From IMG/VR virus record IMGVR_UViG_3300017917_001996, positions 62,001 to 126,000 of that record: a stretch of 64,000 nucleotides of DNA. One strand, written 5' to 3'. Below, one piece after another: positions 32,003 to 55,063 of this stretch. The number at the start of each line of letters is the position of its first letter. The stretch's first letter is position 1. A program made the position numbers and the translations under genes. The notes below the pieces were generated by a model. The model did not search any database, was not told the DNA's origin, and saw nothing but the letters and a program-made list of their open reading frames with translations.

Positions 32003-35000
32003 TTAATCAGTACTTGGCGTATTTCCACCTTCAACCATAGTGCCTGCAGAATGCACAATTGGTGCGCCAGTGCCGCCTGTTCCTCGTCTTATATTACTTA
32101 AGACGTTAGTAGAAATCTTAGCAGAATATTCTATCCTTTCGCCATTTACGTAAATGACGCCAGGTGTCGACGGTGATACCGGAGTTATTAGTACAGAACC
32201 GTCATCGACAGTAATAGTTGTGTCATTGATATTTAAATCTTGAGATAAAACAGTTCTGACGTTGGCTGCTACTACCACTTTGCTTCTGTCTTCTGCCATA
32301 CTGACAAATACTCGGTAACCTCCAACTACAACATTAGATTCATTTTTACGAATCATTCTTAGATTTAACGAATCAAAAACTGATCCAGGTAACAATTCTT
32401 GAGGTGAGTGGCTTAGTATTTCGCTTACAAATGCACCACCATTAATTGTTATATCTTCGGATGATATACCGCCGGCGCCACCGAATGCACTGGCACCAAT
32501 TGCAATTACTAATTTACCGGTACCTGTACCTGCTGCGGTTGCAGTAAAAATTACACCAAGTGTATTTTCTGGTGCACCCATGGCTACAAAGTTAGTATTA
32601 CCTAGTGTAGTAATAATGTACTTTTCGCCGACTGTAATCAAGTTTGGTGCGATAGTTTCGCCATTAAATGCACCCCCAGAAATAATAGAATCAATGTCAA
32701 CCGATGCAACAACATTAGCCTGCGGGTTGTCCAAACCGTCGATTAAACGATTTAAAATCTTAGGAACCATTGTTGCAGTCGGCTGATAGTAGGCCATAAT
32801 CCTGTCATTGGCATTATCAAAACTGCTAGACGATACAGGAGTCCACTTTGAAGGATCAAAATATACACTAGCCGCAATACCAATGCCTGTGTTATTCTTA
32901 TAACCCATGCCTTGATAACTTACATAACTTCCTGCACTGTATGCAGTATTGGATTGCCAATCTGTTACTGCACTGGTATATTGAACTCGGTCGAATCTAA
33001 TAACAGTTTTAACTTTACGAATCTTACCGTTATACAGTCTTGGCGAACCGATAGCGTTTCTAACATTAGTCAAAGATACTGTTGTTATATTGCTACTAAT
33101 AATATTACCGGTTACGTTGCTGGTTATATTGCTGTATACGTTAGCCGTCAAATTGGCATACTTACTCATTGGTGTATAGCCAGTTCCTGATATATTAACA
33201 ATCGGTGTATTGATATACCCGCTGCCAGTGTTAGTAACAGTTATTCTGTTAATACTACCATCAATTGAACTAATAGCAGCCTCAGCAGTTGCACCACTAC
33301 CGGTTGTGTCTGTGCTAATAATTGAAATATCAGGATTGTTTAAATGTCCTTTGCTGCGTTCAGCTATTTCTATACTAGCAACTTCATATGTATAATTGTT
33401 TGCCCAATCACGATACTTTGGATTAGTTGCCAACAATGTTGAGTCAATCGATAAGTCACCGCTAGGACTACGGAAACGTTCAAGATCGCTATCATAGTAT
33501 GGCGGTAAATCAAAGTCAGATACAGCAGCACCAGATGTTTCATCAGTTGCTGAATAGTTTAAATTGTACTCTCTAATCTTTGTTCTATATGGCTTGACTT
33601 CGTCGATATATTGTCTGTACAACTCTTGTTGATCTTTAATAAATGACGACGATTGTATCAATCCTTCAAACTTATGTGCAATAGATACAAAGCTAGTCTT
33701 AAAGATCCAGTCAACATATTTTTGTTCAGCTAAAATGTATTCAATTATTGCGAACAAGAACTTGTTGTAAAAGTTAGCTAAATCTTTGACAAATATATCT
33801 TCTTTGATTCCTTTAAGGATGTATCGTAACTCAATGGTAGAACCTAGGTCAAAGGGTCCAGAGTCAAAGCTATAAAAATCGTAGCCTTTTTTGTTATACA
33901 ACGAGTCGTTTAACTGTATTGTACCATCTTGTAAGCCAACAAGTTTTAGCTTACCTGCACGGTATTGGTATAGTTCAAATAAGTTGCCGCCATTATTACG
34001 AACTTTAACTACATCGTTAATAGACAATGGTAATGTGTATGTTTGATAAAAACTGTCAACGGTATAATTAATTTTGGTTTTACTGCTAAAACCTTTTTCG
34101 TACCAATCAACTTTTCTCCAGTAATTAGTAACGTCAAAAACTTGTACCTTAACCAAGGTAGCTGTACTATCAGCGTTCTTTTCGTAGACACTCCAGTAAT
34201 CATTGTAATTAGCGTCAGTAGCAACAAAAATTCTTCTTGGATAGCACAATCCAGTTCCTGTACCAGCAGCACTGGCAGTAAATACTGTACCTGGATTATT
34301 ATTAGCTGCACCTAGTGTCACAAAATTAGTAGTACCCGCTGATATGATAATATATTTCTTACCAGGAATTAACGCATTAGCTGCTAACTCTGGTACATAG
34401 TCAAGTTGAATATAGTTATCAACGTTGTAATCATACTCGCTTTCCGTTGGTGGAGTACTAGCGGCGTAAAAATTGTCAGAGTAAACAATTTCTTTGTTGA
34501 CAATTCTGCTAGTAATAGGGTATTGAATTAAGACCGAGTTAATGTAATCGACTACACTCTTAACTGCTTTTAATCTATCGATGATCAGAGTTTGTCTAGG
34601 CTGCTTACTCAAACCCAAACGATCCTTAGGCAGAAGACTTGGATCAGGAACCTTGTTGCCGCTGATATCTGCTCCAATTAAACTGTCAATTAGTTTTTCT
34701 TCAATTCTAGGATTTAGGATACTCTTGGAATTGCCTTCCTGGAATAACTCAAATTCACTGTGAATGATATCTTCGTTGACTTTTAATTTGTAATCAATAT
34801 GCAATGCTGTGTTAGTTCCAGATAAGAACTGTCCACAATTATAAAGCATAACGCTGTTGTCTTTTAAGACTGCAACATAAGATATTCCTTGCGACACCGG
34901 AGACTTGATCATTCCTGCAATAGTGTATGCACTGTGGGTCTTAGACCTCAAGGTTACTTCGGACCTTCCAGCAACCCAGTAGCAGTAACGAGTCTTAATT

Positions 35001-38000
35001 ACTCCAGTTCTAGGATCAACACGATTTAAAGTTACATATGCGGTATCATTTGCATATTTAGGTGTTCCTTGTTGGCCCGACGATACATAAGCCGAGGGCA
35101 GGACATCGGTGATAACCCACTCATAAACTTCAACTGTACTTCCTGGGAACATCTCTCCCCAATGCTTAATTCGGTACTCAAGGCTATCTTGTTCATAATC
35201 AACATAGCGAAGATTATCGACATCCCACCAGATGGTACCTTGTTGTTTTTCACCCCAATGGGATTCTAATTCAATTAAGAACTCAGTTGAAGAGCCATTA
35301 TTATATTTGGCTGGATCTATGCTAGATATAAAATCAATGTCAGCTAATGCAGTGCCTAGTATTTTTCCTTTAGCAGGGTCAATTATGTCTAGTCTTTCAA
35401 GTATTACCTTGTCTACATTATTGTAAAGGTACATACTTCCAACTGATGCTAAATCAACTTTAGGTTCTTGGTTGCGTTGAACATTCCATGTTGTGCCATT
35501 GGACAGCACATAGGTAACCGGCGGAGTACCTAAACCAGGAACTACATTGTTTACAGTCTCAGAAATTGGACCATAATATGTAGGACCAATAACATACGGA
35601 TAGACTGGGTTGTCATTGTTGTCAACAGTAACAAAATATGCATATGTACCTTCTGGATAATCTGGTGTTACGCAGAATCTTCCGTTGTGTTGATCTAGAG
35701 TACCACTACCATCAACAAACATATAATCCTGTATAAACATACCCATTGGGTATTGTATAAAGTTACAAGACTCAACAACTCTATAGCTAGAGTTCTTAAA
35801 TCTATAACTAGATCTCATTTTGATAACAGGACTGTTCTTGTTTCCTTTTATTGCATAACCATAAGGACCGTAAATTGGATATCCATCGTTAGCAAAACCT
35901 AATATCTTGCTGTGCCCGTCTGGATGGCGTAATGATCCAGCAAGGTATTTTATTTCTTCGATTTCAGCTGTACCTGGTTTGTCTACAGTTGTTCCAATAC
36001 CTGTTTCCCATGCATTTTCAAATGTAAAGCTATTATAGGAATACATGCCAGATTCTGACAGAATCCCGCCGGCAGCATCCTTGTCTAATACACCATAATT
36101 AGAGTAAACTAAATTGTAATCATAGTCAGAGATTAACAAATAGTCACCAGGAGCGTACCCAGACACGCTAGGCGCTGTAACTGGAACGCCATTGAGCCAA
36201 TAACCGGTAATACCTGTTGCTGCTACTTCGGTTACCGCAGGAATGTCCTTGCCACCATTTAATGGCCAAATTCTATTATAGTGCTGATCCACTGCTGAAC
36301 TTACAGTTTTACCGTGTGTATGGTAAGGTGCGCCAGTTGTGCGAATGTTTATAGAACCGTTTTTAATTCCCCATGCACTGTGGCGGCCGCTGTAATTACC
36401 CAATGTACCTCTAACATAACTGTACACTGCCCAACGACCGTCTTCAGTTGTGTCAACCCAGGCAAAGTCTCCAGTATTTCTTGGTAGCTTGGTATAGTCA
36501 GCATCCCTGTCAGTGACAGTTGCATAACGGCAAGGTTCGAAGATAAACATTTCACCTGAAGATTGTATACTTCCAGTGGTGTCAAGTACGTTGGCTAATG
36601 CCAAGGTAATAAATGCGACAACAGTATTGTATTCTTCAGTGTTAACTACTTGATAGAAACCATTGAAATTACTATCAAAGTTTCTTATAGCAAATACGTC
36701 TCCAATTTGTAAACCATGATCGTACTTGAATGTCAACTTAATTTTATTATCAAGCGCATATTCTAATAGTATCAATTCGTTGTCAGTTGCTCGTGCTTGA
36801 TATACTTGCCAATCTTCATTGAAATCTTTAGCTGCCCATAGTTTGTATCCATCATCTAGAGATGATAAAATATTGCTTCCAATTTCAGAGTACTTTGATA
36901 TATCAAAGATTGTGCCATCTATATCGTTGTAATTAACATAGCCTGCTGTCTTTATATCAGTTTCTGTTTCTTTTAAAGAATTACGATTAATGAATATCGG
37001 AGCACGGTAATTTAAAGGATTGTTTATTAACTGATTAGGCTTAATCGTATTCACCGTATCATTGGAGTCGTCGTCGTAGTTTAACAACTTAAATGCAGAT
37101 GGATTAGCTTTAAACTTGGCCTCATCAAGTATCAGGTCGATACTTTGGTTTGACCTCAAAGCTCCATATTCGCCTACACGAACTGCCCATTCTTCATACA
37201 TCTCAACAGAGCTCTTAACATTATCAAAGTATCTTCCGAACAGTGCAGTTGTTGAATTTTTTGTTCCTTTTTCTTTGATATAACCTTGATAAAACTTAAC
37301 TTGTGTTGTTTGATCCATTCCTAGATTTTCTAAGAATGGTCTATTCCTAAATCCGATCAGACCGGTACTAAACTTTCCAAAGTCTTCGTCAAGAGAAACG
37401 CTGTCTACGTTGTAGACTTCTTCAAATTTCTGAGCATTGTGTGCAAAATTGGGGCTTAGACCAGAATCAATCTTCCTGTCTAGGATACTCCAGTTATCGA
37501 AGTTGAATGCAGTTGTTCCTGCAATGTCTTGAATAGCTGTGTAATTCTTATCTTTGTATCTAACAATATCACCCTTGATATAGTCTTGGTTTTGTTTCCA
37601 GTCGTCGACTTTACCAGTATTGTAGATAAAGCCAGGCGGCTCTAGTCCGCCTTGCCAATCAGTAGTTTTGTTGCCAATAAGTTTAATACGATATTGTCTT
37701 GTACCCAACTCTGGCTTGTAAAGAATATCGTTAAACACTGTAACATTATCAAAAATTAGTACATGTTCTTTCTGAACAAGCTCAAGTTCTGCAAGTGCAA
37801 TAGTCTGCCCTGACACTACTGTTACTGTTGTTAAATTAGTTTCTCTGTTAACACTAATTTCATTTAACGGAATAACGTTAAAGTTAGGTCCAAGAATCTT
37901 TGAACGCTGTGTTTGATTGGTAATTTGATCAACTACAAAGGTTTCATTGAAGAATAGAATTGAATTACTAGCTGGACTTAGTACAACTATATTTCCTTCT

Positions 38001-41000
38001 CTCCAGCCTTGCTCAGACCATGTTAAGAATTCTTTAGCACTCAGTGTCCAATCTAATACATGTGTTAGCTCAGGACTATATTGATTAAAAACAAACCCTT
38101 GGCTTACTAGATAACGCTGATAACCTATTAGGAAATCAACAACCTGTTGTTTATTAGTAAACTCATAGCCATACGGAACAACAATTTTTTCAGATCTGTA
38201 ATTTTCAAAAATTACTGCGTCTGAGTCTGCTGACTGAATGGTATAATATGACCCATTAAACTCGCTAGGAATAACTGTAAAGAACGGATTCTTTAAATCG
38301 TATCCAGATATCGAATACCCTGTCGCCGTTTTTTCAACAATAACTGCACTGTAGGTAGCCTTGGTAACTGCTATTCCATTGTTCAAGTGAACCAGGTAGT
38401 TCTCGTCGGGTATGATAACAGAAGTATTTGTACTGCCTGGACTAAACTGTTCAACTAGAGCAGTTAAGTATTTCTTGTCGGTATAACCTGCAATTTTATA
38501 TCCTAGTTTGATTTCGTTATTATCTAAAAGTCCGCGAATCTTCTCAACTGCATCGACACCTAGGTTAGTTAGATAACCATGTATCCAATTGATATAGCCT
38601 AAGGAACGATTAATCTCTCCATTAATTGTTTCACCATTTATTGTAATACGCTTACCGTTAGGACGTAGTTTTGAATCTTTGATTAGGTAAGAGTCTGTAT
38701 CGGTGTCTTTATAGTACGATGTAGTATCAAACAACAAGCCAAAATACATTGCTGGCTTCATTAAAGCCATGGCACGCTGTACTGCAAAAGGAAATTCGCT
38801 GGTCCTTCTCCAAGCCTCTTCAACTGGTCCATTATCACCAATAACAAAGTTTTGACTAAACTTTGTTCCATTGAAACTTCTTACTAAACGTGCACCAGGA
38901 GGCGGTAGTAAATTACCCAAACCGTCTACTGGAATAATATTTTTTAAACCTGGGCGCTTGAATCTATTGTCTACCGCATTGTTACCGAAGTTAAAACCAT
39001 TTTCTAAATCTGTCCACAATACAGTGTTGTTAGATTTATAAGGTGCTATACCGTATCTAGTTTCCCACCATGTAGGCTTTTCAGTAAAACCTAACATCTC
39101 CCATGGGTGTGTATGAGGACGATCGGTGTCGTATATGTACTTGTAAATACCTCTCCAATGTCCTAGCAATGGCTCGTCATTAATAGTATCGTCGGTTTGA
39201 TTGTAATTCCAAGTAAACTGATCATTAGATAAGAAGTAAGGATTCTTTGTAAATGACAACTGATTATTACCGGCCCACTTTAAGAATTCACCGGTTAAAA
39301 TCTGATTGTACTCTCTAATAGAATATTCAGTGGTACGGAACTTTCCAGGTATTACTGAATGTATATCAAATAAATCTTTATTGTATTGTATCTTGATGTT
39401 GTTGTATATTCTTGTTTCTAATTCTAGTAGATAATTATCTCTTAGATCATTAAACACTGGAGTTAAGCTACCGTCATGACCCTGTATTACCTGTACAGGG
39501 TTTCTATATGTGTTGTCAGTAAATATCTCAGGAACAAACTTAGGATATAAACCTAACTTGGTTGGTGTTTCAGGAACATAATTACCATCAGTATCTAGAT
39601 AACCTTTTACAGTTAAAATGTCTCCAGTGGCAACAGTTAATGAACTAGACAGTTGGATAGTAGGAGTTGTAGGTCCAATACTGTAATCTTTACCAAGAGT
39701 TAATAGCTTCTTGTTTAGATAAACTGATATAGCTTTACTGGTTTTCTTACCTGGGTATATATCAATGCCAATTTCAGTAAATATCTCATTGATGTAGTGT
39801 GTTTTATTTGATGAATTAAGTATCTTAAATTCTTCAACTACATAATTCTTACCCCATGGTAACATGTCACTGTAGAACCATGGGAATGAAATATTCTTAA
39901 CTGCATTAATCGACGATAAAATAGTTTCAATGCCCGAAGAAGGATCTTCTGGATCTAGTTCGGACATTGAAACACATAATTCTAAAAATTTATTCTTAAA
40001 CTTTTGATATTCACGTCGTGCAAAATCTAGACTGTTAATAAAATTAACCTGAGGATCATTTAAAAATAATGCTGTATTAACCAAAGTTGCAGAATGCTGC
40101 AATAACGTACCGGCTCCAAATTTTCCTATATCTCGAGAATTATTTTTTCCTAATGGCGCACCAACTAGATTATTTGTGTTGTTTAAAATCCTAGACCAAT
40201 GGTTTTGCATTTGGCCTAGTGTTACTGCATTAATTAAAATATTTTGAGGATTTAATTCAAGATTAAGTGGTATATTGTAGTAACCTAAGCTGCTCGTCTG
40301 TTTACTGTAGATAATAATGTCAATATCATCCCCAGTTTCCAGTACTGTATCAATATATATTGCTTTAAGAACCCCAACAGTTCTAATCTCTATTAGAGAA
40401 TCGTCAACAATTTTATTGTTAACATAAACTTTAAGATTTGGTTGATCAATCTCGTCGGCTGGTAAAACATCAATTTCAAAATAATTTGTTACACCATCGA
40501 ATGTGTGTTTAATGTGTTGATATTGTTTTGTTTGTTCAGTAACCTTGGGCCAGACACTGGTTTTAACATATGTTTCTCTAGAAACATTGTGCTGTAAGTA
40601 ACCAGTTAATATTTGTTTCGATTCAAAAAGATATGGTTTGTATGTAAATGAGTCTGTATCGAAGTAATTAGTAAAGTTAATATCTGCAAATGAATTACCA
40701 GTATTACTGTATTTTAAAGAAAATCCTAAAATAGAATCAACAGCCGATGTACCTCTAGTATAGCCAAACACTTTGCAACCAGCAAAGGTTGTCTTTGGGT
40801 ACGACGATTCATTACCAAAGCTAATACCTTGGTCGTCAACGACATCAAACAAAGGATCTTGGTTAGCACCAGATTTCCATTGAGACTGTACCCAATTTGA
40901 GCCATTAAACCAATAACTCTTTTTAGCATTAGCTCCAGAATTAATTACTACAGAATCGTAACTAACTGCTGTTTTATGCTCTGTGATAATTATACGAGGA

Positions 41001-43210
41001 CGATTAAATTTAAAACCAGCTGTAATGTAGTTAAATGTAGCAGGTTGTTCTAGTGTCAGTGTATTATTGTTAAGAATATTTTTTACTTTACCAATAAACA
41101 ATCCTTGCAGAGTATATAGCACAGTACCGGGCTCAATTTGTTGAACAAATGATGTCTTTGGATATTGAGCTGCTAGTGTACCATCAACTACTTCGTTGCT
41201 GCCATTTCTGACTGTAATGATACCAGTACCGGTTGCATCAAAAACTGTAGTTGTAGTCTGGTCAATAAATTCTATTTTATAAACTTTTGATCTCACTACT
41301 GGATCAGAATCTGATGGGAATACTACTAACTGCCCTTCTTTGATACCTAAATTTTTAATGGCAGCATCAGCGGGATTACGGTTAGTTAACAAATCAAATG
41401 CGTCTGCAATCGGTGTTGTTCCGATTCTATCATAGCAGCGATCGATAATACCTAAGAACACTCTTCCGTGATTAAACAACTGAATGTCTGGATCAAATTC
41501 AATGATAGGACGACGTGCACGATTTTCTGCAACAATTTCGGGTACAGTTTTGGTATACTCTGCTGTTTTGAGTAAGACATCAATGTGTATCCAACGATTT
41601 AATCTAGACCATGCGTTTAAATCCTTGGATGCACGGTGCATAACAATATACTCAGGTTTAACACTACCGAAGATTGGTTCATCCCACGGCCCTTGGTCAA
41701 ATCCTATTGTGTCCCAAGGAACTGAACTTTCTGGTAATTCACTTTCAATGGGAATTAATAAAGAGAAGTCAACCAACTTAATGCTTTTACCGACGCCCTC
41801 AACAATGTAAGATTTGTTATGATACGAGCTAGGAGTTACAGTGTTGTCGAATTGAACCTTCATGCCATTAGAGAAGACGACTCCGCTAGGACTTGTGTAG
41901 GAAGTTTTGCCTACAATATCAGCATCGACGTTAATTCTATTACCAGGAGAATCAACAATGTGAAGTTTTCCAACAAACTTTGAGTCAGAACCGTCGGTGT
42001 AGTACAAAACAGAAAGAGGAGCAGTAATTTGTCTTGCTGACTCAAACTGTCCCGAAGAGTTTTTAAAAAATTCATTGCCAGCATTAACAGTTCCGTGGAT
42101 GCTGCGAATTCTTGTACTAACAGCAATGTCGACTACAAATTCAAAACGAATACGTGGTGTTCTGTATGTGCCGTTATATAGAGAACTATCTTCAACAATT
42201 TTTACTTTCCAAATTCCTCTTCTTAGCGCATCAGGAACATAACTACCAGAATAATAAGTCCAATCGGCATTGGCGTTGCTAGAGTTTACAAAAACAATAA
42301 ACTCACCTTCAGGAAATCTTGTAGATCCATCGATGTCGTTTAATAGTTGAGCATGTTGAGGATTTGCAGAGTTACGTCGAGGATCGTCATTGGCTAAAGA
42401 TGGTGCCCATATACGACCGTCTAACGACGAAAATGTATCGTTGACTGCATAATGAATATAGTCAATTAGAGGATTTTTTAGATAATGATCTTGTGCATCG
42501 CGCTCGGGTACAGTAAATGAGATAATACCTTGCGTAGCACCGTTGTTAGTAACACCAAAAATATCTCTAGTAGAGACGGTTGGAGAATATTGTTTTTTAC
42601 CACTGGTTCCAGGTTCTGTTTGAATCCAAAACCCACCTGTTTGTAGAACTGAAAAGTAATATGTTGCGCCACGAACTAAGGTTAGGTCAGGGTTATCTAC
42701 AGTACCGGTTAAATCAGTCCTATAGCCATTGGTACTGCGTCCAATGGTATATACTTCGTTATTATTAGGTGTACCGGCAGTAATAGTAATTGTTGCCGGG
42801 CCGTTTGGCATCCAGTAGTACTGAGAGAAATTTGAGAGTTTGTCAAGGTCGATACAAGGATCGTAATTATAGTAGTCAGCCTTAAACAAACGGTCATGGT
42901 TAGACTTAATACCGCCGTAGTACTCAACCTTATTAATCAGATCTTTATAATCAACATATAAATTAACAACATTGTTATTTTCAACAACAACAGCAGGTTC
43001 AAGTTGATAATTTTGTCTATCGTCGGTGGGCTCGATAAGATAATTGTCACTTGCACTATATGCAGTAGAAAATTTTCTTCCCACAAAACCATTTATTTTA
43101 GTCAGCGATGGCTCGCTAATTAATTGGTCTAGCGTAACATTTAGAAACTTTTTGTTAGTTTCTGATCTAAAAATTTCTGGAAGAAAATTGATTGTCTTTC
43201 TAATGGCCAT
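32003..43210 (-). CDS. Giant baseplate wedge-type structural protein (3735 aa) with an inserted YHYH-like domain
   Basis: Follows the gp6-like gene, at the position of T4 gp7; internal HSKILGFANDGYPIYGPYG and LDQHNGRFCVTPDYPEGTYAYF motifs. Confidence 0.75.
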   Translation of the reverse strand: MAIRKTINFLPEIFRSETNKKFLNVTLDQLISEPSLTKINGFVGRKFSTAYSASDNYLIEPTDDRQNYQLEPAVVVENNNVVNLYVDYKDLINKVEYYGGIKSNHDRLFKADYYNYDPCIDLDKLSNFSQYYWMPNGPATITITAGTPNNNEVYTIGRSTNGYRTDLTGTVDNPDLTLVRGATYYFSVLQTGGFWIQTEPGTSGKKQYSPTVSTRDIFGVTNNGATQGIISFTVPERDAQDHYLKNPLIDYIHYAVNDTFSSLDGRIWAPSLANDDPRRNSANPQHAQLLNDIDGSTRFPEGEFIVFVNSSNANADWTYYSGSYVPDALRRGIWKVKIVEDSSLYNGTYRTPRIRFEFVVDIAVSTRIRSIHGTVNAGNEFFKNSSGQFESARQITAPLSVLYYTDGSDSKFVGKLHIVDSPGNRINVDADIVGKTSYTSPSGVVFSNGMKVQFDNTVTPSSYHNKSYIVEGVGKSIKLVDFSLLIPIESELPESSVPWDTIGFDQGPWDEPIFGSVKPEYIVMHRASKDLNAWSRLNRWIHIDVLLKTAEYTKTVPEIVAENRARRPIIEFDPDIQLFNHGRVFLGIIDRCYDRIGTTPIADAFDLLTNRNPADAAIKNLGIKEGQLVVFPSDSDPVVRSKVYKIEFIDQTTTTVFDATGTGIITVRNGSNEVVDGTLAAQYPKTSFVQQIEPGTVLYTLQGLFIGKVKNILNNNTLTLEQPATFNYITAGFKFNRPRIIITEHKTAVSYDSVVINSGANAKKSYWFNGSNWVQSQWKSGANQDPLFDVVDDQGISFGNESSYPKTTFAGCKVFGYTRGTSAVDSILGFSLKYSNTGNSFADINFTNYFDTDSFTYKPYLFESKQILTGYLQHNVSRETYVKTSVWPKVTEQTKQYQHIKHTFDGVTNYFEIDVLPADEIDQPNLKVYVNNKIVDDSLIEIRTVGVLKAIYIDTVLETGDDIDIIIYSKQTSSLGYYNIPLNLELNPQNILINAVTLGQMQNHWSRILNNTNNLVGAPLGKNNSRDIGKFGAGTLLQHSATLVNTALFLNDPQVNFINSLDFARREYQKFKNKFLELCVSMSELDPEDPSSGIETILSSINAVKNISFPWFYSDMLPWGKNYVVEEFKILNSSNKTHYINEIFTEIGIDIYPGKKTSKAISVYLNKKLLTLGKDYSIGPTTPTIQLSSSLTVATGDILTVKGYLDTDGNYVPETPTKLGLYPKFVPEIFTDNTYRNPVQVIQGHDGSLTPVFNDLRDNYLLELETRIYNNIKIQYNKDLFDIHSVIPGKFRTTEYSIREYNQILTGEFLKWAGNNQLSFTKNPYFLSNDQFTWNYNQTDDTINDEPLLGHWRGIYKYIYDTDRPHTHPWEMLGFTEKPTWWETRYGIAPYKSNNTVLWTDLENGFNFGNNAVDNRFKRPGLKNIIPVDGLGNLLPPPGARLVRSFNGTKFSQNFVIGDNGPVEEAWRRTSEFPFAVQRAMALMKPAMYFGLLFDTTSYYKDTDTDSYLIKDSKLRPNGKRITINGETINGEINRSLGYINWIHGYLTNLGVDAVEKIRGLLDNNEIKLGYKIAGYTDKKYLTALVEQFSPGSTNTSVIIPDENYLVHLNNGIAVTKATYSAVIVEKTATGYSISGYDLKNPFFTVIPSEFNGSYYTIQSADSDAVIFENYRSEKIVVPYGYEFTNKQQVVDFLIGYQRYLVSQGFVFNQYSPELTHVLDWTLSAKEFLTWSEQGWREGNIVVLSPASNSILFFNETFVVDQITNQTQRSKILGPNFNVIPLNEISVNRETNLTTVTVVSGQTIALAELELVQKEHVLIFDNVTVFNDILYKPELGTRQYRIKLIGNKTTDWQGGLEPPGFIYNTGKVDDWKQNQDYIKGDIVRYKDKNYTAIQDIAGTTAFNFDNWSILDRKIDSGLSPNFAHNAQKFEEVYNVDSVSLDEDFGKFSTGLIGFRNRPFLENLGMDQTTQVKFYQGYIKEKGTKNSTTALFGRYFDNVKSSVEMYEEWAVRVGEYGALRSNQSIDLILDEAKFKANPSAFKLLNYDDDSNDTVNTIKPNQLINNPLNYRAPIFINRNSLKETETDIKTAGYVNYNDIDGTIFDISKYSEIGSNILSSLDDGYKLWAAKDFNEDWQVYQARATDNELILLEYALDNKIKLTFKYDHGLQIGDVFAIRNFDSNFNGFYQVVNTEEYNTVVAFITLALANVLDTTGSIQSSGEMFIFEPCRYATVTDRDADYTKLPRNTGDFAWVDTTEDGRWAVYSYVRGTLGNYSGRHSAWGIKNGSINIRTTGAPYHTHGKTVSSAVDQHYNRIWPLNGGKDIPAVTEVAATGITGYWLNGVPVTAPSVSGYAPGDYLLISDYDYNLVYSNYGVLDKDAAGGILSESGMYSYNSFTFENAWETGIGTTVDKPGTAEIEEIKYLAGSLRHPDGHSKILGFANDGYPIYGPYGYAIKGNKNSPVIKMRSSYRFKNSSYRVVESCNFIQYPMGMFIQDYMFVDGSGTLDQHNGRFCVTPDYPEGTYAYFVTVDNNDNPVYPYVIGPTYYGPISETVNNVVPGLGTPPVTYVLSNGTTWNVQRNQEPKVDLASVGSMYLYNNVDKVILERLDIIDPAKGKILGTALADIDFISSIDPAKYNNGSSTEFLIELESHWGEKQQGTIWWDVDNLRYVDYEQDSLEYRIKHWGEMFPGSTVEVYEWVITDVLPSAYVSSGQQGTPKYANDTAYVTLNRVDPRTGVIKTRYCYWVAGRSEVTLRSKTHSAYTIAGMIKSPVSQGISYVAVLKDNSVMLYNCGQFLSGTNTALHIDYKLKVNEDIIHSEFELFQEGNSKSILNPRIEEKLIDSLIGADISGNKVPDPSLLPKDRLGLSKQPRQTLIIDRLKAVKSVVDYINSVLIQYPITSRIVNKEIVYSDNFYAASTPPTESEYDYNVDNYIQLDYVPELAANALIPGKKYIIISAGTTNFVTLGAANNNPGTVFTASAAGTGTGLCYPRRIFVATDANYNDYWSVYEKNADSTATLVKVQVFDVTNYWRKVDWYEKGFSSKTKINYTVDSFYQTYTLPLSINDVVKVRNNGGNLFELYQYRAGKLKLVGLQDGTIQLNDSLYNKKGYDFYSFDSGPFDLGSTIELRYILKGIKEDIFVKDLANFYNKFLFAIIEYILAEQKYVDWIFKTSFVSIAHKFEGLIQSSSFIKDQQELYRQYIDEVKPYRTKIREYNLNYSATDETSGAAVSDFDLPPYYDSDLERFRSPSGDLSIDSTLLATNPKYRDWANNYTYEVASIEIAERSKGHLNNPDISIISTDTTGSGATAEAAISSIDGSINRITVTNTGSGYINTPIVNISGTGYTPMSKYANLTANVYSNITSNVTGNIISSNITTVSLTNVRNAIGSPRLYNGKIRKVKTVIRFDRVQYTSAVTDWQSNTAYSAGSYVSYQGMGYKNNTGIGIAASVYFDPSKWTPVSSSSFDNANDRIMAYYQPTATMVPKILNRLIDGLDNPQANVVASVDIDSIISGGAFNGETIAPNLITVGEKYIITTLGNTNFVAMGAPENTLGVIFTATAAGTGTGKLVIAIGASAFGGAGGISSEDITINGGAFVSEILSHSPQELLPGSVFDSLNLRMIRKNESNVVVGGYRVFVSMAEDRSKVVVAANVRTVLSQDLNINDTTITVDDGSVLITPVSPSTPGVIYVNGERIEYSAKISTNVLSNIRRGTGGTGAPIVHSAGTMVEGGNTPSTD

Positions 43211-51831: not shown

Positions 51832-52133
51832 TATATTCCTAGATCAGTTATTAAGTTCTCTTTAGCAGGGATATAAATTACCTGCCCAGGATAAAAGTCA
51901 AAAATAGGATCCCTGATAACATTAGGATTTCTTGCAGCAAACACCCACCAGAGCGCAGCATTACCATATAAGTCCGCTGCCAATAAATCAGGACGGTACT
52001 TATAAGTTGGCGCAATAGTATGACGGATATCTAATGAATTTTTAGTTATAGTCCTATGCTCTAGTACATCCAAAAAGATACCAAAATTCTTAGTATTGTA
52101 ATAAGGACTATATTTGCTATATTGTGCGGCCAT
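51831..52133 (-). CDS. gp53: Baseplate wedge protein, gp53-like (LysM-type)
   Basis: RPDLLAADLYG...LWWVFA..N...DPIFDF..G..IYIP. Confidence 0.8.
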   Translation of the reverse strand: MAAQYSKYSPYYNTKNFGIFLDVLEHRTITKNSLDIRHTIAPTYKYRPDLLAADLYGNAALWWVFAARNPNVIRDPIFDFYPGQVIYIPAKENLITDLGI

Positions 52134-53018
52134 TTATAGGAATCCTCTATTAATTAAATCGCCTCTGCTAAAGCTACTAAGATTAAAATTGCCAGCAGCC
52201 CTTTTACTGTAAACCGGTTGCAACGAAACAGACAGCGTACTGGTCGTTGGTACTCTAGTAGACGAATTCGAATACGACGAATTACCAGGAGAATCCCAAC
52301 TACTAAACAATCTATCAGTAAAGTTCTCGTTATAGTTTCCAAACGTTGAACCATCGGATTGCCCAGTTAAAAAATCTTGCGAGTTTTGCGGACCGGTTTC
52401 GACATAGTCAACATCTTGCGGTAACGTATGACTAAATTGTGTAACCAAGCACGGAACGTGCGGAAAGTAATGTGTTCCATAACCGTCTAGATATACTATA
52501 GGTGGCGGATTACCTACGTTCTGGCCTGATCCAAAGAACATTTTTGTTGCGGATCTAAAGAAATAAATACAAGCCAGCAGGTAATTTGCTTCATTTCGAT
52601 TTTGTACAGTAAAGTCAGCGTTGATTTGTATTACTTGTACTTCACTGTTTTCATATGCATAAGCTGGATAGTTGCTATGTGTTAAACGTTGCGGAGTGTA
52701 GTTAGCCTGATGTGTTACCACTATCTGCGGAGTGTAAGGAAAAATTACACCTTGAGTTTGATTCAAAGGAGACATTACACCTGAATAGGATAATGCTTGT
52801 GCATTGGTGCTAACTTTAACACGCCAATCTTTACCAGGTACAGTACCAGAACCGCTGAAATTTATATTAGCGTTACCTAGCTCAGGAGACATAAATCTAG
52901 AACCACCGAATTGCAGGCCAGCAGATGCCAAACGTGCCATAGACGGGCTAAAGGTATTAACCACCGACGAAACAGCACGGTTTATCGAACCGCCAACGAT
53001 ATCATTAAGCCAAGACAT
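52134..53018 (-). CDS. Baseplate-tail tube junction protein (gp48/gp54-like)
   Basis: GVIFPYTP.I...THSNY, FFG...GNPPP.V.L.GYG...F..VP..VT.F...LP.DVDY motifs. Confidence 0.65.
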   Translation of the reverse strand: MSWLNDIVGGSINRAVSSVVNTFSPSMARLASAGLQFGGSRFMSPELGNANINFSGSGTVPGKDWRVKVSTNAQALSYSGVMSPLNQTQGVIFPYTPQIVVTHQANYTPQRLTHSNYPAYAYENSEVQVIQINADFTVQNRNEANYLLACIYFFRSATKMFFGSGQNVGNPPPIVYLDGYGTHYFPHVPCLVTQFSHTLPQDVDYVETGPQNSQDFLTGQSDGSTFGNYNENFTDRLFSSWDSPGNSSYSNSSTRVPTTSTLSVSLQPVYSKRAAGNFNLSSFSRGDLINRGFL

Positions 53019-53071
53019 ATAATACTCTCCAGTTATATATTTATGTCCATCAAAATATGCTATTTTAATCG

Positions 53072-53100
53072 TTGACTTTTGCTCAAAAATTTGTTACATT
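53072..53100 (+). promoter_or_regulatory. Sigma70-type promoter of the late sigma factor gene
   Basis: TTGACT-N17-TACATT with TG extension. Confidence 0.7.
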
Positions 53101-53121
53101 ACTCACTAAAGGGGAACTAAA

Positions 53122-53997
53122 ATTAAACACAACTATTTAAACAATAAGGATATACTCAAAGAGATACATCGCAGTAAAAATACCTATTGTGTTTACTCCA
53201 GCCCAGAGTATTCCGATTACGATCTTATCATCAATGACGTTTCTGCAATAACCGCCGAAGTAGTCAATCAAGCTCGAAATAATCGAGCAGAGCGTTTAGC
53301 CAAACTAGCACACGAGCAGGCTACTTCCGGCGGCGAAAAGCGAAAATTAGACGAATTTTATATTGATCCTGTTACTATCAAAGACTCAGAAATCATCTTC
53401 CGAGTAATGACCTGGGATCACGTACCCGTACAGCCTACCGTTAAAAAGGCCACAGATGTAGAAGTTGAAGATGAAATTCATACTGAATATGATATCGAAG
53501 ATGACGCAGTTAAGCTACCGACTGCTGCTGTCAAGTATGTTAAGTGTAATTTTCCTCCATTCCAACACTATAAATTCAACGAAGCAGGTAAGCTCGATTG
53601 CGTAGGCAAGAGCCACTGGAAGGGCCCATTGGACAGTGGAGAATGGTGCAGAGACCACGGTACAATGACCAAAACGTTAGCTACTATGTTTATGAAACTG
53701 TGTGAGCGTTATGCTACACGTAGCAACTGGCGTGGGTACACTTATAATGACGAAATGCGTAGCCAAGCTCTGCTACAGTTAAGTCAAATTGGTTTGCAGT
53801 TTGATGAATCTAAATCACAGAACCCATTTGCTTATTATACTGCTGCTATCACTAATAGTTTCACTCGTGTGCTAAACATCGAAAAACGTAATCAAAACCT
53901 ACGCGATGATATACTAGAAATGAATAACTTTAACCCAAGTTACACACGACAAGGACTAATGAGCGGAGCACATTACGGCGACGGAGACCACGATTAA
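53122..53997 (+). CDS. gp55: Late-transcription sigma factor, gp55-like; N-terminus extended to a non-canonical ATT start
   Basis: NYLNNKDILKEI N-terminal motif; KLCERYA.R.NWRGYTY.DEM and FDE.KSQNPFAYYT...NSF.R.L..EK motifs; frame open from 53110 with no in-frame ATG/GTG/TTG until 53407. Confidence 0.85.
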   Translation: MKHNYLNNKDILKEIHRSKNTYCVYSSPEYSDYDLIINDVSAITAEVVNQARNNRAERLAKLAHEQATSGGEKRKLDEFYIDPVTIKDSEIIFRVMTWDHVPVQPTVKKATDVEVEDEIHTEYDIEDDAVKLPTAAVKYVKCNFPPFQHYKFNEAGKLDCVGKSHWKGPLDSGEWCRDHGTMTKTLATMFMKLCERYATRSNWRGYTYNDEMRSQALLQLSQIGLQFDESKSQNPFAYYTAAITNSFTRVLNIEKRNQNLRDDILEMNNFNPSYTRQGLMSGAHYGDGDHD

Positions 53998-54046: not shown

Positions 54047-55063
54047 ATGAGTAATCTATTTAAAAAAGCTGCAATTTTTACTGATATTCACTTTGGACTA
54101 AAGTCAAACAGTCAGATTCACAATGAAGACTGTTTGGCTTTTGTAAAGTGGGCTTCAGCCAAGGCTCGGCAGGAAGGTTGCGAAACTGCTATATTTTTAG
54201 GTGATTGGCATAACAATAGATCTACAATAAATATTGTTACGCTAAATTACAGCCTACAAGCACTGGAACACCTAAATGCTAATTTTGATGTGGTTTATTT
54301 TATTCCTGGTAACCATGATTTGTATTATCGTGACAAGAGGGATATACAAAGCGTGGAGTGGGCAAGACATCTCGGAAACGTCCAAATCGTTAACAATTGG
54401 TTTGTCACTGATGATGTGGTCATTGCCCCTTGGCTTGTTGGCGACGATTATAAACGTATTCCTAAACTAACCGGCAAATACATGTTCGGGCACTTTGAGT
54501 TGCCCGGTTACATGATGAACGCCATGGTTGAAATGCCCGATCACGGAGAAGTTAAGAGAGAACACTTTACTAACTTTGAACATGTGTTTACAGGGCATTT
54601 CCACAAGAGACAAACTAAAAAGAACATTACCTACATTGGCAACTGCTTTCCGCACAACTATGCAGACGCAGGCGACGATGAGCGTGGACTAACTATCCTT
54701 GAATGGGGTAAGCCCGCAGTATATCATGCATGGCCCGATCAACCCGTTTATCGAGTTTACGATCTTAGTGCAATTTTAGATCGGCCCGACGAATTACTTA
54801 AACCCGGCGTACATGCTAGAGTTAACTTAGACATCGACATTAGCTACGAAGAAGCCAGCTTTATCCGTGAAACGTTTATGGAAAGCCATAAACTGCGAGA
54901 AATTAAATTAATTCCACGCCACAACACAGAAATCGATACATCAGCTACACAAGGCAATATTGCTTTCCAGAGCGTCGATCAAATTGTAAGTAATCAATTG
55001 ACTGGTATTACCAGCGATCATTACAATACTAAGCTATTGCTTGAAATTTATCAAAACCTATAA
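54047..55063 (+). CDS. gp47: Recombination endonuclease subunit (Mre11/SbcD-like)
   Basis: TDIHFG, LGDWH, GNHD, GHFE, GHFH phosphoesterase motifs. Confidence 0.92.
   Translation: MSNLFKKAAIFTDIHFGLKSNSQIHNEDCLAFVKWASAKARQEGCETAIFLGDWHNNRSTINIVTLNYSLQALEHLNANFDVVYFIPGNHDLYYRDKRDIQSVEWARHLGNVQIVNNWFVTDDVVIAPWLVGDDYKRIPKLTGKYMFGHFELPGYMMNAMVEMPDHGEVKREHFTNFEHVFTGHFHKRQTKKNITYIGNCFPHNYADAGDDERGLTILEWGKPAVYHAWPDQPVYRVYDLSAILDRPDELLKPGVHARVNLDIDISYEEASFIRETFMESHKLREIKLIPRHNTEIDTSATQGNIAFQSVDQIVSNQLTGITSDHYNTKLLLEIYQNL

What the first reader, a model, noticed from the sequence alone, without database searches (positions are those of the whole stretch)
53072..53409. Late sigma factor (gp55-like) apparently initiates at ATT
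Seen: an in-frame TAA at 53107-53109 is followed by AGG GGA ACT AAA ATT AAA CAC AAC TAT TTA AAC AAT AAG GAT. The frame stays open for 95 codons with no in-frame ATG, GTG or TTG before 53407, yet encodes the family N-terminal motif NYLNNKDILKEI. An SD-like AAGGGGA (53109-53115) sits 6 nt before ATT 53122, just after a sigma70 promoter. Known: AUU starts (infC, pcnB) are inefficient and are discriminated against by IF3. Inference: the master switch for late transcription is throttled at initiation, possibly coupling late-gene onset to the host's IF3 or translation state.
Basis: partly seen in the sequence, partly recalled or inferred. Interest (0 to 1): 0.72.

Follow-up and report, generated by a model that had tools for sequence, protein, structure and literature searches.

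The report
Phage late sigma gene starts at ATT
The late-transcription sigma factor gene of this uncultured jumbo phage, like that of about a hundred related environmental phages, begins with the weak start codon ATT (sometimes ATC) behind an unusually strong ribosome-binding site, a conserved feature that gene callers get wrong and that probably limits how much of the late switch protein is made.

Summary
In window 53107-53409 an in-frame TAA is followed by AAGGGGA, a 6-nt spacer and ATT 53122. There is no in-frame ATG, GTG or TTG for 95 codons.

Those 95 codons are real coding sequence. They match T4 gp55 and PHROG 12791, and pN is 0.11-0.25 against saturated pS.

The ATT is not an assembly error. 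A second assembly of the source run reproduces it at about 100x depth. I also collected 288 distinct homologous loci from IMG/VR and metagenomes. At exactly this codon they carry ATT (90), ATC (9), ATG (57), GTG (22) or TTG (2), never ATA. Every other locus starts canonically 1-8 codons further upstream.

ATT/ATC loci share a fixed initiation region, AGGAGAAnnAAA-ATT-AAACAC. GGAG is present in 95 of 99 of them, against 5 of 81 canonical loci. A sigma70-like promoter ends 21-28 nt upstream.

So ATT is the start codon, conserved across a large clade. That it throttles late sigma, or couples it to IF3, is plausible by analogy with infC, pcnB and Streptomyces sigR, but untested. The stronger SD may partly offset the weak codon.

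This is a new member of a known kind. Interest is moderate to high.

The parts
53072..53100 (+). Sigma70-type promoter-like site: TTGACT, 17-nt spacer, TACATT, with TG one base before the -10 (extended -10). The predicted transcript start is near 53107, giving a 5' leader of about 14 nt.
   Evidence: A comparable promoter is found in 41 of 47 ATT/ATC relatives, with the -10 ending mostly 21-28 nt before the start codon. The transcript start is inferred, not measured.
53107..53109 (+). In-frame TAA that closes the reading frame five codons upstream of ATT.
   Evidence: The four codons between it and ATT are AGG GGA ACT AAA, none of which can start translation.
53109..53115 (+). Shine-Dalgarno sequence AAGGGGA, 6 nt before the start codon. 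It is the clade's AAGGAGA with A changed to G at 53113, which still allows a G-U pair with the anti-SD.
   Evidence: Duplex energy with the 16S 3' end is -7.8 kcal/mol. That puts it in the strongest 12-18% of crude gene starts in this genome.
53122..53124 (+). ATT initiation codon of the late sigma gene.
   Evidence: At this exact codon, 288 distinct homologous loci carry only ATT 90, ATC 9, ATG 57, GTG 22 or TTG 2. The remaining loci start 1-8 codons further upstream with a canonical codon.
53122..53997 (+). Coding sequence of the gp55-like late sigma factor: 291 codons plus stop.
   Evidence: PHROG 12791 E 1.6e-80 over residues 2-277; PHROG 234 E 2.6e-23. T4 gp55 chain 7d7c_F E 1.5e-5. tblastn to PA5oct, Atu_ph07 and Rak2-like sigma factors starts at residues 2-5.
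53407..53409 (+). First in-frame canonical start codon (Met96). It is an internal methionine, not the start.
   Evidence: No SD precedes it. Codons 2-95 are conserved and selected. In the AlphaFold model the confidently predicted domain (blocks 21-100 and 141-180, pLDDT above 70) runs across residue 96.
53037..53044 (-). ATAAATAT, a candidate late promoter of the divergent virion structural gene, 18 nt before that gene's start codon.
   Evidence: It is the most enriched 8-mer upstream of ORFs in the genome (9 observed, 0.61 expected). Of its 23 genomic copies, 21 lie within 90 nt upstream of a same-strand ORF. Function is inferred.
52134..53018 (-). Divergent neighbour: virion structural protein gene.
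   Evidence: PHROG 12050 E 2.8e-49. The same neighbour occurs in PA5oct, GAP32 and XaC1.
54047..55063 (+). Downstream neighbour: SbcD/gp47-like nuclease subunit gene.
   Evidence: PHROG 100 E 9.5e-55. Pfam Metallophos. The same neighbour occurs in PA5oct, Atu_ph07, GAP32 and XaC1.

Best explanation
Shown by sequence and comparison: the gene at 53122-53997 encodes a gp55-type late sigma factor of an uncultured jumbo phage, and its translation must begin at ATT 53122.

Inferred from established initiation biochemistry: AUU is read by initiator tRNA, so the protein begins with formyl-Met.

The gene is probably transcribed from a host-sigma70-type promoter that ends 21 nt upstream. This would give a short, unstructured leader whose SD (AAGGGGA) sits 6 nt before the ATT.

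The arrangement is not a quirk of this genome. It is the conserved state of a large clade of environmental phages, with the initiation region AGGAGAAnnAAA-AUU/AUC-AAACAC. Sister lineages carry AUG, GUG or UUG at the same codon behind a weaker, less fixed SD.

Inferred mechanism: the strong, optimally spaced SD and the A-rich context recruit 30S subunits well. Acceptance of the AUU codon is then limited by IF3 proofreading. Sigma synthesis from an early promoter is thereby held to a low, dosage-controlled level. That level is intrinsically sensitive to the IF3-to-ribosome ratio, ppGpp and temperature.

My probabilities:
- The ATT start: about 0.9.
- ATT serving to limit or tune sigma dosage: about 0.5.
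- The phage exploiting IF3 sensitivity as a signal: about 0.2.
For: No alternative start in the window
- A stop lies five codons upstream. There is no canonical codon for 95 codons downstream.

The N-terminal 95 codons are coding
- T4 gp55 residues 7-21 align to residues 2-16.
- The PHROG 12791 match begins at residue 2.
- Cultured relatives begin with ATG 3-10 codons before the motif.
- pN is 0.11-0.25 against pS 0.69-0.9.

The homologous codon carries only start-capable triplets
- ATT 90, ATC 9, ATG 57, GTG 22, TTG 2, ATA 0, and no other sense codon.
- Two nearby conserved Ile codons use all three Ile triplets: 19/20/6 and 6/14/27 for ATT/ATC/ATA.

Upstream context in ATT/ATC loci
- 64 of 99 have no in-frame canonical codon before the upstream stop. 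In three loci the stop is only two codons upstream.
- GGAG lies 4-10 nt upstream in 95 of 99, against 5 of 81 canonical loci. The spacer is 7 nt in 83 of 99. AAA precedes the start in 76 of 99. Mean duplex energy is -8.0 against -6.0 kcal/mol.

Phylogeny
- The tree of 103 proteins needs 11 changes between the two start types, and at least 5 are forced by well-supported branches. The window sits in a supported clade with 16 of 18 ATT.

Other support
- Promoter. The initiation region is unstructured. A second assembly agrees.
- This is the only ORF in the 250-kb record with this signature.

Precedents
- Near-cognate codons initiate at 0.02-3% of AUG in E. coli reporters (10.1101/063800).
- AUU mRNA is the most IF3-sensitive and competes poorly at low temperature, and nutrient limitation and ppGpp depress all non-AUG starts; infC uses AUU or AUC (PMC5499595).
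- Streptomyces sigR uses a conserved GTC start behind an extended SD and is repressed by IF3 (PMC5472188).
Against: - There is no direct evidence of initiation: no proteomics, ribosome profiling or transcript mapping. The host is unknown and the phage is uncultured.
- The link between start type and SD strength is clade-structured. Only 6 phylogenetically independent contrasts exist on supported branches (same direction 3-4, opposite 0-1, no difference 2-3), and the sign test is not significant.
- The stronger SD may compensate for the weak codon, so a net throttle is not shown.
- In vitro, with an optimised initiation region, AUU mRNA reached 0.74 of AUG (PMC5499595). AUU therefore need not mean low output.
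- Five of 47 complete ATT loci have an in-frame TTG on the predicted leader, though it lies upstream of the SD.
- The window's own SD lacks the clade's GGAG.
Confidence: 0.82

Rival explanations
1. The ATT start is real but has no regulatory meaning. Weak codon plus strong SD, and strong codon plus weak SD, are two near-equivalent ways to reach the same output. Lineages drift between them, and IF3 sensitivity is an unused by-product.
For: - Both start types occur in sister lineages with many switches (11 parsimony changes).
- SD strength tracks codon weakness, as compensation predicts.
- In optimised contexts AUU can reach 0.5-0.74 of AUG in vitro (PMC5499595).
- The phage record holds no IF3 gene, RegA gene or tRNA gene.
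Against: - ATT is one transversion from ATG, yet it persists across lineages whose synonymous sites are saturated.
- The initiation region of ATT loci is far more constrained than that of canonical loci: fixed 7-nt spacer, AAA context, AAA second codon. This suggests a tuned device rather than drift.
- In vivo, near-cognates give only 0.02-3% of AUG (10.1101/063800). Full compensation by about 2 kcal/mol of SD pairing is doubtful.
Confidence: 0.35
2. Translation starts at ATG 53407 and gives a 196-residue protein. The open frame upstream is untranslated leader.
For: - It is the only canonical start in the frame and is what ORF listing returns.
- Met96 is invariant among the 30 close relatives aligned.
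Against: - No SD precedes 53407.
- Codons 2-95 show pN far below pS.
- They hold the family's N-terminal motif, which is shared with T4 gp55, and residues invariant out to PA5oct and Rak2-like phages.
- Met96 is not invariant in that wider alignment.
- In the AlphaFold model the confidently predicted domain (blocks 21-100 and 141-180, pLDDT above 70) runs across residue 96.
Confidence: 0.03
3. The ATT is a sequencing or assembly error, or a private inactivating mutation of an ATG in this one genome (a pseudogene).
For: ATT differs from ATG by one base. The record is a metagenome assembly.
Against: - An independent assembler's 36-kb contig from the source run agrees over 52000-53715 at depth about 102, with no variant listed at 53122-53124.
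- ATT or ATC stands at this codon in 98 other distinct loci from many samples.
- The gene is otherwise intact and under purifying selection.
Confidence: 0.01
4. Translation begins at a canonical codon further upstream or in another frame, and reaches the sigma frame by read-through, frameshifting or coupling.
For: - Gene callers give many relatives N-terminal extensions from upstream ATG or TTG.
- 35 of 99 ATT/ATC loci have some in-frame canonical codon upstream.
Against: - In the window an in-frame TAA lies five codons upstream, and the two upstream ATGs (53043, 53058) open ORFs of 10 and 3 codons in other frames.
- The extensions differ in length and sequence between close relatives. They translate the SD (RR or RG) and the promoter -10; for example, the TTG of P0002 lies inside the TGTTACAT element.
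- Most lie upstream of the predicted transcript start.
- The upstream gene is on the other strand, so coupling is not possible.
Confidence: 0.03

Closest known systems
infC (IF3 gene) of E. coli and other bacteria: AUU or AUC start, autoregulated by IF3
   Same: - A conserved AUU/AUC (not AUA) start codon behind a good SD.
- The codon is kept across wide divergence.
- Initiation at AUU is the step that IF3 discriminates against (PMC5499595, 10.1101/063800).
   Different: - The product here is a phage sigma factor, not IF3, so there is no autoregulatory loop.
- No IF3 gene was found in the phage record.
- IF3 dependence was not tested here.
Streptomyces sigR: conserved non-canonical GTC start repressed by IF3 (Feeney et al. 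2017, PMC5472188)
   Same: - A sigma factor whose dosage matters.
- A non-canonical start conserved within a clade but canonical in more distant relatives.
- An extended SD that is thought to stabilise the mispaired initiation complex.
- Systematic misannotation to a nearby upstream canonical codon.
   Different: - The codon differs (GTC against ATT/ATC).
- sigR is cellular, not viral.
- There the balance with an anti-sigma factor is the known reason. Here a partner such as a gp33-like co-activator, the clamp or host sigma70 is only conjectured.
pcnB (poly(A) polymerase I) of E. coli: AUU start
   Same: AUU is used to hold down synthesis of a protein (cited in 10.1101/063800 as one of two confirmed E. 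coli cases).
   Different: It is a single-species example of a host enzyme. No co-varying SD pattern across a clade has been described there, to my knowledge (from memory).
T4 gp55 and the annotated late sigma factors of PA5oct, Atu_ph07, Phosso, GAP32 and XaC1
   Same: - Same protein family, with the N-terminal N-Y-(L/V)-N-N-K motif and the core region.
- Same neighbourhood next to the SbcD/gp47-like nuclease in four of the five; Phosso has a glycosyltransferase gene downstream instead.
   Different: - All five cultured jumbo-phage relatives examined start with ATG.
- T4 gp55 is 185 residues. This protein is 291, with about 150 extra residues between the motif and the core.
Bacillus subtilis sigG: late sigma kept low by a GTG start, an RBS hairpin and promoter spacing (PMC5942855)
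   Same: Translation of a late-acting sigma factor is tuned down by a sub-optimal start codon, so that the early-to-late switch is properly timed.
   Different: - GTG is a canonical start and its effect is modest (1.3-fold).
- Here the initiation region is unstructured and the codon is non-canonical.

Membership tests
gp55-type phage late sigma factor | Significant sequence match to the family profiles | tested here: met
   PHROG 12791 'sigma factor for late transcription', E 1.6e-80, residues 2-277. PHROG 234 'late sigma transcription factor', E 2.6e-23, residues 180-277. No Pfam family matched at E 0.01.
gp55-type phage late sigma factor | Match to experimentally characterised T4 gp55, including the N-terminal motif and the core | tested here: met
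   7d7c_F gp55, E 1.5e-5. Residues 183-256 align to gp55 40-115. KHNYLNNKDILKEIH aligns to KYNYVNNKELLQAII, a weak stretch on its own.
gp55-type phage late sigma factor | Conserved genomic neighbourhood beside the gp47/SbcD-like nuclease gene | tested here: met
   The SbcD-like gene lies 50 nt downstream. The same order occurs in PA5oct, Atu_ph07, GAP32 and XaC1.
gp55-type phage late sigma factor | Late genes preceded by a -10-only A/T-rich late promoter (T4: TATAAATA) | tested here: inconclusive
   TATAAATA itself is not enriched (1 found, 6.2 expected). The related word ATAAATAT is the most enriched 8-mer upstream of ORFs (9 against 0.61), and 21 of its 23 copies precede a same-strand ORF. 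Promoter activity is untested.
gp55-type phage late sigma factor | Binds host RNA polymerase core and directs late transcription, with co-activator and sliding clamp | not testable with these tools
   This needs biochemistry or genetics. The AlphaFold model of the sigma-like C-terminal helices was of low confidence, and no PDB fold match was found.
Genes initiated at a non-canonical AUU/AUC codon (infC, pcnB type) | No in-frame canonical start can account for the conserved N-terminus | tested here: met
   In the window a stop lies five codons upstream and the first canonical codon is 95 codons downstream. 64 of 99 ATT/ATC loci have no upstream canonical codon.
Genes initiated at a non-canonical AUU/AUC codon (infC, pcnB type) | SD at functional distance from the proposed codon | tested here: met
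   In the window AAGGGGA lies 6 nt upstream, -7.8 kcal/mol. In the clade GGAG is present in 95 of 99 loci and the spacer is 7 nt in 83 of 99.
Genes initiated at a non-canonical AUU/AUC codon (infC, pcnB type) | Homologues carry only start-capable codons at that site | tested here: met
   ATT 90, ATC 9, ATG 57, GTG 22, TTG 2, and no ATA or other sense codon. Nearby Ile codons vary freely.
Genes initiated at a non-canonical AUU/AUC codon (infC, pcnB type) | Direct demonstration of initiation (N-terminal peptide, toeprint or initiation-arrested ribosome footprint) | not testable with these tools
   The only run holding the sequence is DNA, kept as contigs. The phage and host are uncultured.
IF3-controlled translational switch (infC autoregulation, sigR repression) | Expression responds to IF3 level or to IF3 fidelity mutants | not testable with these tools
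   There is only the general property of AUU initiation, known from E. coli work (PMC5499595). No IF3_C domain gene is present in the 71%-complete record.

The most novel reading that the evidence does not exclude
The AUU/AUC start makes synthesis of the late sigma factor a built-in sensor of the host's translation state. After infection, sigma accumulates only when the ratio of free IF3 to 30S subunits is low and ppGpp is low; both conditions favour initiation at non-canonical codons. This large clade of environmental jumbo phages would then gate the irreversible early-to-late switch on host physiology, at the level of start-codon proofreading. The fixed AGGAGAAnnAAA-AUU-AAA initiation region would be the evolved sensor module. 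Lineages that reverted to AUG, GUG or UUG with a weak SD would have given up that gating.
Probability: 0.2. Interest if true: 0.8.

Novelty: new member of a known kind. Interest (0 to 1): 0.6.

Why it matters
**Annotation.** Standard gene callers cannot see this start. In public protein sets the relatives are either truncated at an internal Met or extended through the SD and the promoter.
- Truncated examples: P0025, P0030 and P0031, at 256-267 residues.
- Extended examples: P0001-P0020, whose N-termini begin MLHSVLRG-, MSRRT- or MSFKICYF-.
- The window's own gene would be called as a 196-residue fragment lacking the family's N-terminal motif.
- Correcting this affects every catalogue of jumbo-phage transcription factors.

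**Biology.** Confirmed non-canonical starts are very rare; two are known in E. coli.
- Here, about a hundred diverged natural variants of one gene carry AUU or AUC with a co-varying SD.
- Sister lineages carry AUG, GUG or UUG at the same codon.
- This is a ready-made natural experiment on how start codon and SD trade off.
- It also allows a test of whether a virus uses IF3 proofreading to dose or time its master late regulator.

Tried and rejected
- **Megablast of the locus against GenBank phages:** no match. The nearest cultured relatives are only 46% identical in protein, so no cultured member of the ATT clade is available.
- **Pfam:** no family for the sigma protein at E 0.01.
- **DNA of the closest protein relative, P0001:** could not be fetched because the sample file is too large. 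P0002 and P0004 were used instead.
- **First structure job:** I repeated it with admissible rows only. The model is mediocre, with mean pLDDT 61 and a poorly predicted sigma core. Foldseek against the PDB gave no match at E 0.001 or better.
- **Phylogenetically independent contrasts for start type against SD strength:** the direction is consistent, but there are too few contrasts (6) for significance. I therefore report the association as descriptive.
- **Search of the phage record for an IF3 C-terminal domain:** none found; the controls rang.
- **Search for a RegA-type translational repressor:** none found. No control genome rang, so this result is uninformative.
- **Search for tRNA genes, including any initiator-like tRNA that could read AUU:** none in 250 kb.
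- **Genome-wide scan for other genes with a long start-less coding 5' part plus an SD and a near-cognate codon:** only this gene. The one high-scoring candidate I checked (window 32403-32786) is a shadow ORF inside a 3735-codon gene on the other strand; the other candidates have no SD-plus-near-cognate signal.
- **RNA structure masking the SD or start:** none. Minimum free energy is -2.1 kcal/mol and z is 0.69.
- **T4 late promoter consensus TATAAATA:** not enriched.
- **Literature searches for an ATT start of a phage late sigma factor:** nothing found in the held library. The library lacks most subscription journals.
Full report
**1. The observation**

- In-frame TAA at 53107-53109.
- AAGGGGA at 53109-53115, then the spacer ACTAAA.
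- ATT at 53122-53124.
- An open frame runs to the stop at 53995-53997.

The first in-frame ATG, GTG or TTG is ATG 53407, at codon 96. A mechanical ORF list therefore gives only a 196-residue product. Read from ATT, the product is 291 residues and begins (I/M)KHNYLNNKDILKEIH.

A sigma70-type promoter-like site, TTGACT-17-TACATT with a TG extension, lies at 53072-53100. A transcript from it would start near 53107. The leader would then be about 14 nt long and begin almost at the SD.

**2. What the gene is**

The window is part of a 250-kb IMG/VR virus record, estimated 71% complete. GC content is 41%.

The protein belongs to the late sigma factor family:
- PHROG 12791 "sigma factor for late transcription": E 1.6e-80, residues 2-277.
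- PHROG 234, the T4 gp55 type: E 2.6e-23.
- Solved T4 gp55 (7d7c chain F): E 1.5e-5 through its core. The N-terminal KYNYVNNKELL stretch aligns as well.
- Nearest cultured relatives: the annotated late sigma factors of Pseudomonas phage PA5oct and its kin (46% identity), Sinorhizobium phage Phosso, Agrobacterium phage Atu_ph07, and Rak2-like phages such as GAP32, CBB and XaC1. All align from residue 2-5 onward.

Gene order is a virion structural gene on the other strand, then sigma, then an SbcD/gp47-like nuclease. PA5oct, GAP32 and XaC1 share it in full, and Atu_ph07 shares the nuclease on the downstream side.

Compared with T4 gp55 (185 residues), about 150 extra residues lie between the N-terminal motif and the core. 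AlphaFold predicts much of that extra region with confidence (pLDDT above 70 for blocks 21-100 and 141-180). The sigma-like helices are predicted poorly. No PDB fold match was found.

**3. Is the ATT real?**

Run X1 is a pond metagenome and probably the source sample. Its Logan contigs were made by a different assembler. They include a 36-kb contig at word depth about 102 that covers 52000-53715 with no difference and no gap.

Stronger still, the same codon appears in many independent assemblies (section 4).

**4. Comparative test of the start codon**

I fetched DNA of relatives in four ways:
- By protein, from IMG/VR.
- By two degenerate motif patterns that do not include the start codon.
- By one of those patterns in JGI/ENA metagenome contigs.
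- By identity, for the closest proteins.

After removing identical copies, 288 distinct loci carry the motif. At the codon homologous to 53122-53124 they read:

| Codon | Loci |
|---|---|
| ATT | 90 |
| ATC | 9 |
| ATG | 57 |
| GTG | 22 |
| TTG | 2 |
| ATA | 0 |

Every remaining locus has a slightly longer N-terminus that begins with ATG, GTG or TTG 1-8 codons further up.

No non-initiating sense codon occupies the site when it is the first codon. By contrast, two conserved Ile codons a few positions downstream use all three Ile triplets (ATT/ATC/ATA 19/20/6 and 6/14/27). Gene-wide Ile usage is 48/30/22%.

Synonymous sites are saturated even against the nearest relative (pS 0.69-0.9), while pN is 0.11-0.25 in codons 2-95. 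The 5' part is therefore translated and selected, and the T of ATT is held by something other than amino-acid coding.

Among the ATT/ATC loci:
- 64 of 99 have no in-frame canonical codon between the upstream stop and the motif.
- In three loci the stop lies only two codons upstream.
- Where gene callers extended relatives upstream, the extensions differ in length and sequence between close relatives.
- Those extensions translate the SD as Arg-Arg or Arg-Gly. In P0002 they begin at a TTG inside the promoter's TGTTACAT element.
- Others were truncated to an internal Met (P0025, P0030, P0031).

Together with the five cultured relatives that start at ATG just before the motif, this fixes the start at ATT 53122.

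**5. Anatomy of the initiation region**

ATT/ATC loci share the consensus AGGAGAAnnAAA-ATT-AAACAC. Canonical-start loci show no positional consensus upstream.

| Feature | ATT/ATC loci | Canonical loci |
|---|---|---|
| GGAG 4-10 nt upstream | 95 of 99 | 5 of 81 |
| Mean duplex energy with the 16S 3' end | -8.0 kcal/mol | -6.0 kcal/mol |

In the ATT/ATC loci the spacer is 7 nt in 83 of 99, and AAA precedes the start in 76 of 99.

The window and its nearest relative carry AAGGGGA instead of AAGGAGA. This is a single A-to-G change that still allows a G-U pair and gives -7.8 kcal/mol. That value lies within the strongest 12-18% of crude gene starts in this genome.

The region is unstructured.

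A sigma70-type promoter precedes the SD in 41 of 47 complete ATT/ATC loci. The -10 mostly ends 21-28 nt before the start codon.

**6. Evolution**

A maximum-likelihood tree of 103 proteins, built with the N-terminal columns removed, places the window in a well-supported 18-member clade in which 16 use ATT.
- The two start types need 11 changes by parsimony.
- At least five changes are forced by well-supported branches.
- The more distant relatives and all cultured ones are canonical, so ATT/ATC is probably derived, with several reversions. The tree is not independently rooted, so this is inference.

The SD association points the same way in the independent contrasts. There are only six of them, and the sign test is not significant. 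I treat the association as descriptive.

**7. Mechanism**

Shown: the start codon, the SD, the promoter-like site and their conservation.

Inferred from established biochemistry: AUU is read by initiator tRNA and is discriminated against by IF3.
- In E. coli reporters, near-cognates give 0.02-3% of AUG (10.1101/063800).
[quoted passage not shown] - With an optimised initiation region, AUU mRNA can still reach 0.5-0.74 of AUG (PMC5499595).

The most likely reading is therefore dosage control of a sigma factor that is transcribed early from a strong host-type promoter. The strong SD guarantees recruitment, and codon proofreading sets the rate.

The closest precedent is Streptomyces sigR. Its conserved GTC start behind an extended SD is repressed by IF3, and its replacement by a canonical codon deregulates the regulon. 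The authors also note misannotation to upstream canonical codons (PMC5472188).

B. subtilis sigG shows the same logic in milder form (PMC5942855).

Whether the phage uses the IF3 or ppGpp sensitivity as a signal cannot be told from sequence. The record holds no IF3 gene, no RegA-like gene and no tRNA gene. No other gene in it has this signature.

**8. Rivals**
- A start at ATG 53407, an assembly error or private mutation, and an upstream start with recoding are each contradicted by the data above. Together they keep under 0.1 probability.
- The serious rival concerns function. ATT with a strong SD, and ATG with a weak SD, may be equivalent set-points without regulatory use. I give that 0.35.

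**9. Novelty and verdict**

Non-canonical AUU/AUC initiation is a known kind of device (infC, pcnB, sigR-like). I found no report of it for a phage late sigma factor in the held library.

New here:
- The gene.
- The scale: about a hundred diverged lineages from lakes, ponds and some marine samples.
- The co-varying initiation region.

I file it as a new member of a known kind, with interest 0.6.

Noticed in passing
window 53037-53044 (-); also 54227, 59054 and 61878 (+), 59081 and 721 (-); further copies elsewhere in G000: ATAAATAT is the most enriched 8-mer upstream of ORFs in the phage record (9 observed, 0.61 expected). Of its 23 copies, 21 lie within 90 nt upstream of a same-strand ORF, and several follow a terminator-like GC stem with a T run. 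It resembles T4's late promoter TATAAATA, which is itself not enriched here, so it may be the late promoter read by this sigma factor. One copy sits 18 nt before the divergent structural gene.
   Followed up: partly
relatives P0001-P0020, P0025, P0030, P0031; L307:1501-2400: Public protein predictions for this family are systematically wrong at the N-terminus. They are either extended through the SD and promoter from chance upstream ATG or TTG codons, or truncated to internal methionines, because callers do not allow ATT/ATC starts.
   Followed up: yes
window 53122-53997, residues about 20-175 of the product: Relative to T4 gp55, the protein carries about 150 extra residues between the N-terminal motif and the sigma core. 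AlphaFold predicts much of this region confidently (pLDDT above 70 for blocks 21-100 and 141-180), as a mixed helix/strand region, but no PDB fold match was found.
   Followed up: partly
window 32003-43210 (-): A single open reading frame of 3735 codons, a giant protein gene. An apparent start-less ORF on the + strand at 32403-32786 is only its shadow.
   Followed up: no
window 53690-53860 and 54510-54660: In the source run's contigs the word depth rises from about 100 to 250-315 over the most conserved part of the sigma gene and part of the nuclease gene. Short divergent contigs map there, with a T>C variant at 53745. This indicates that several related phages with the same conserved gene co-occur in that pond.
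   Followed up: no
G000 whole record (250,289 bases): ARAGORN finds no tRNA gene in the part of this jumbo-phage genome that is held, which is 71% complete.
   Followed up: no
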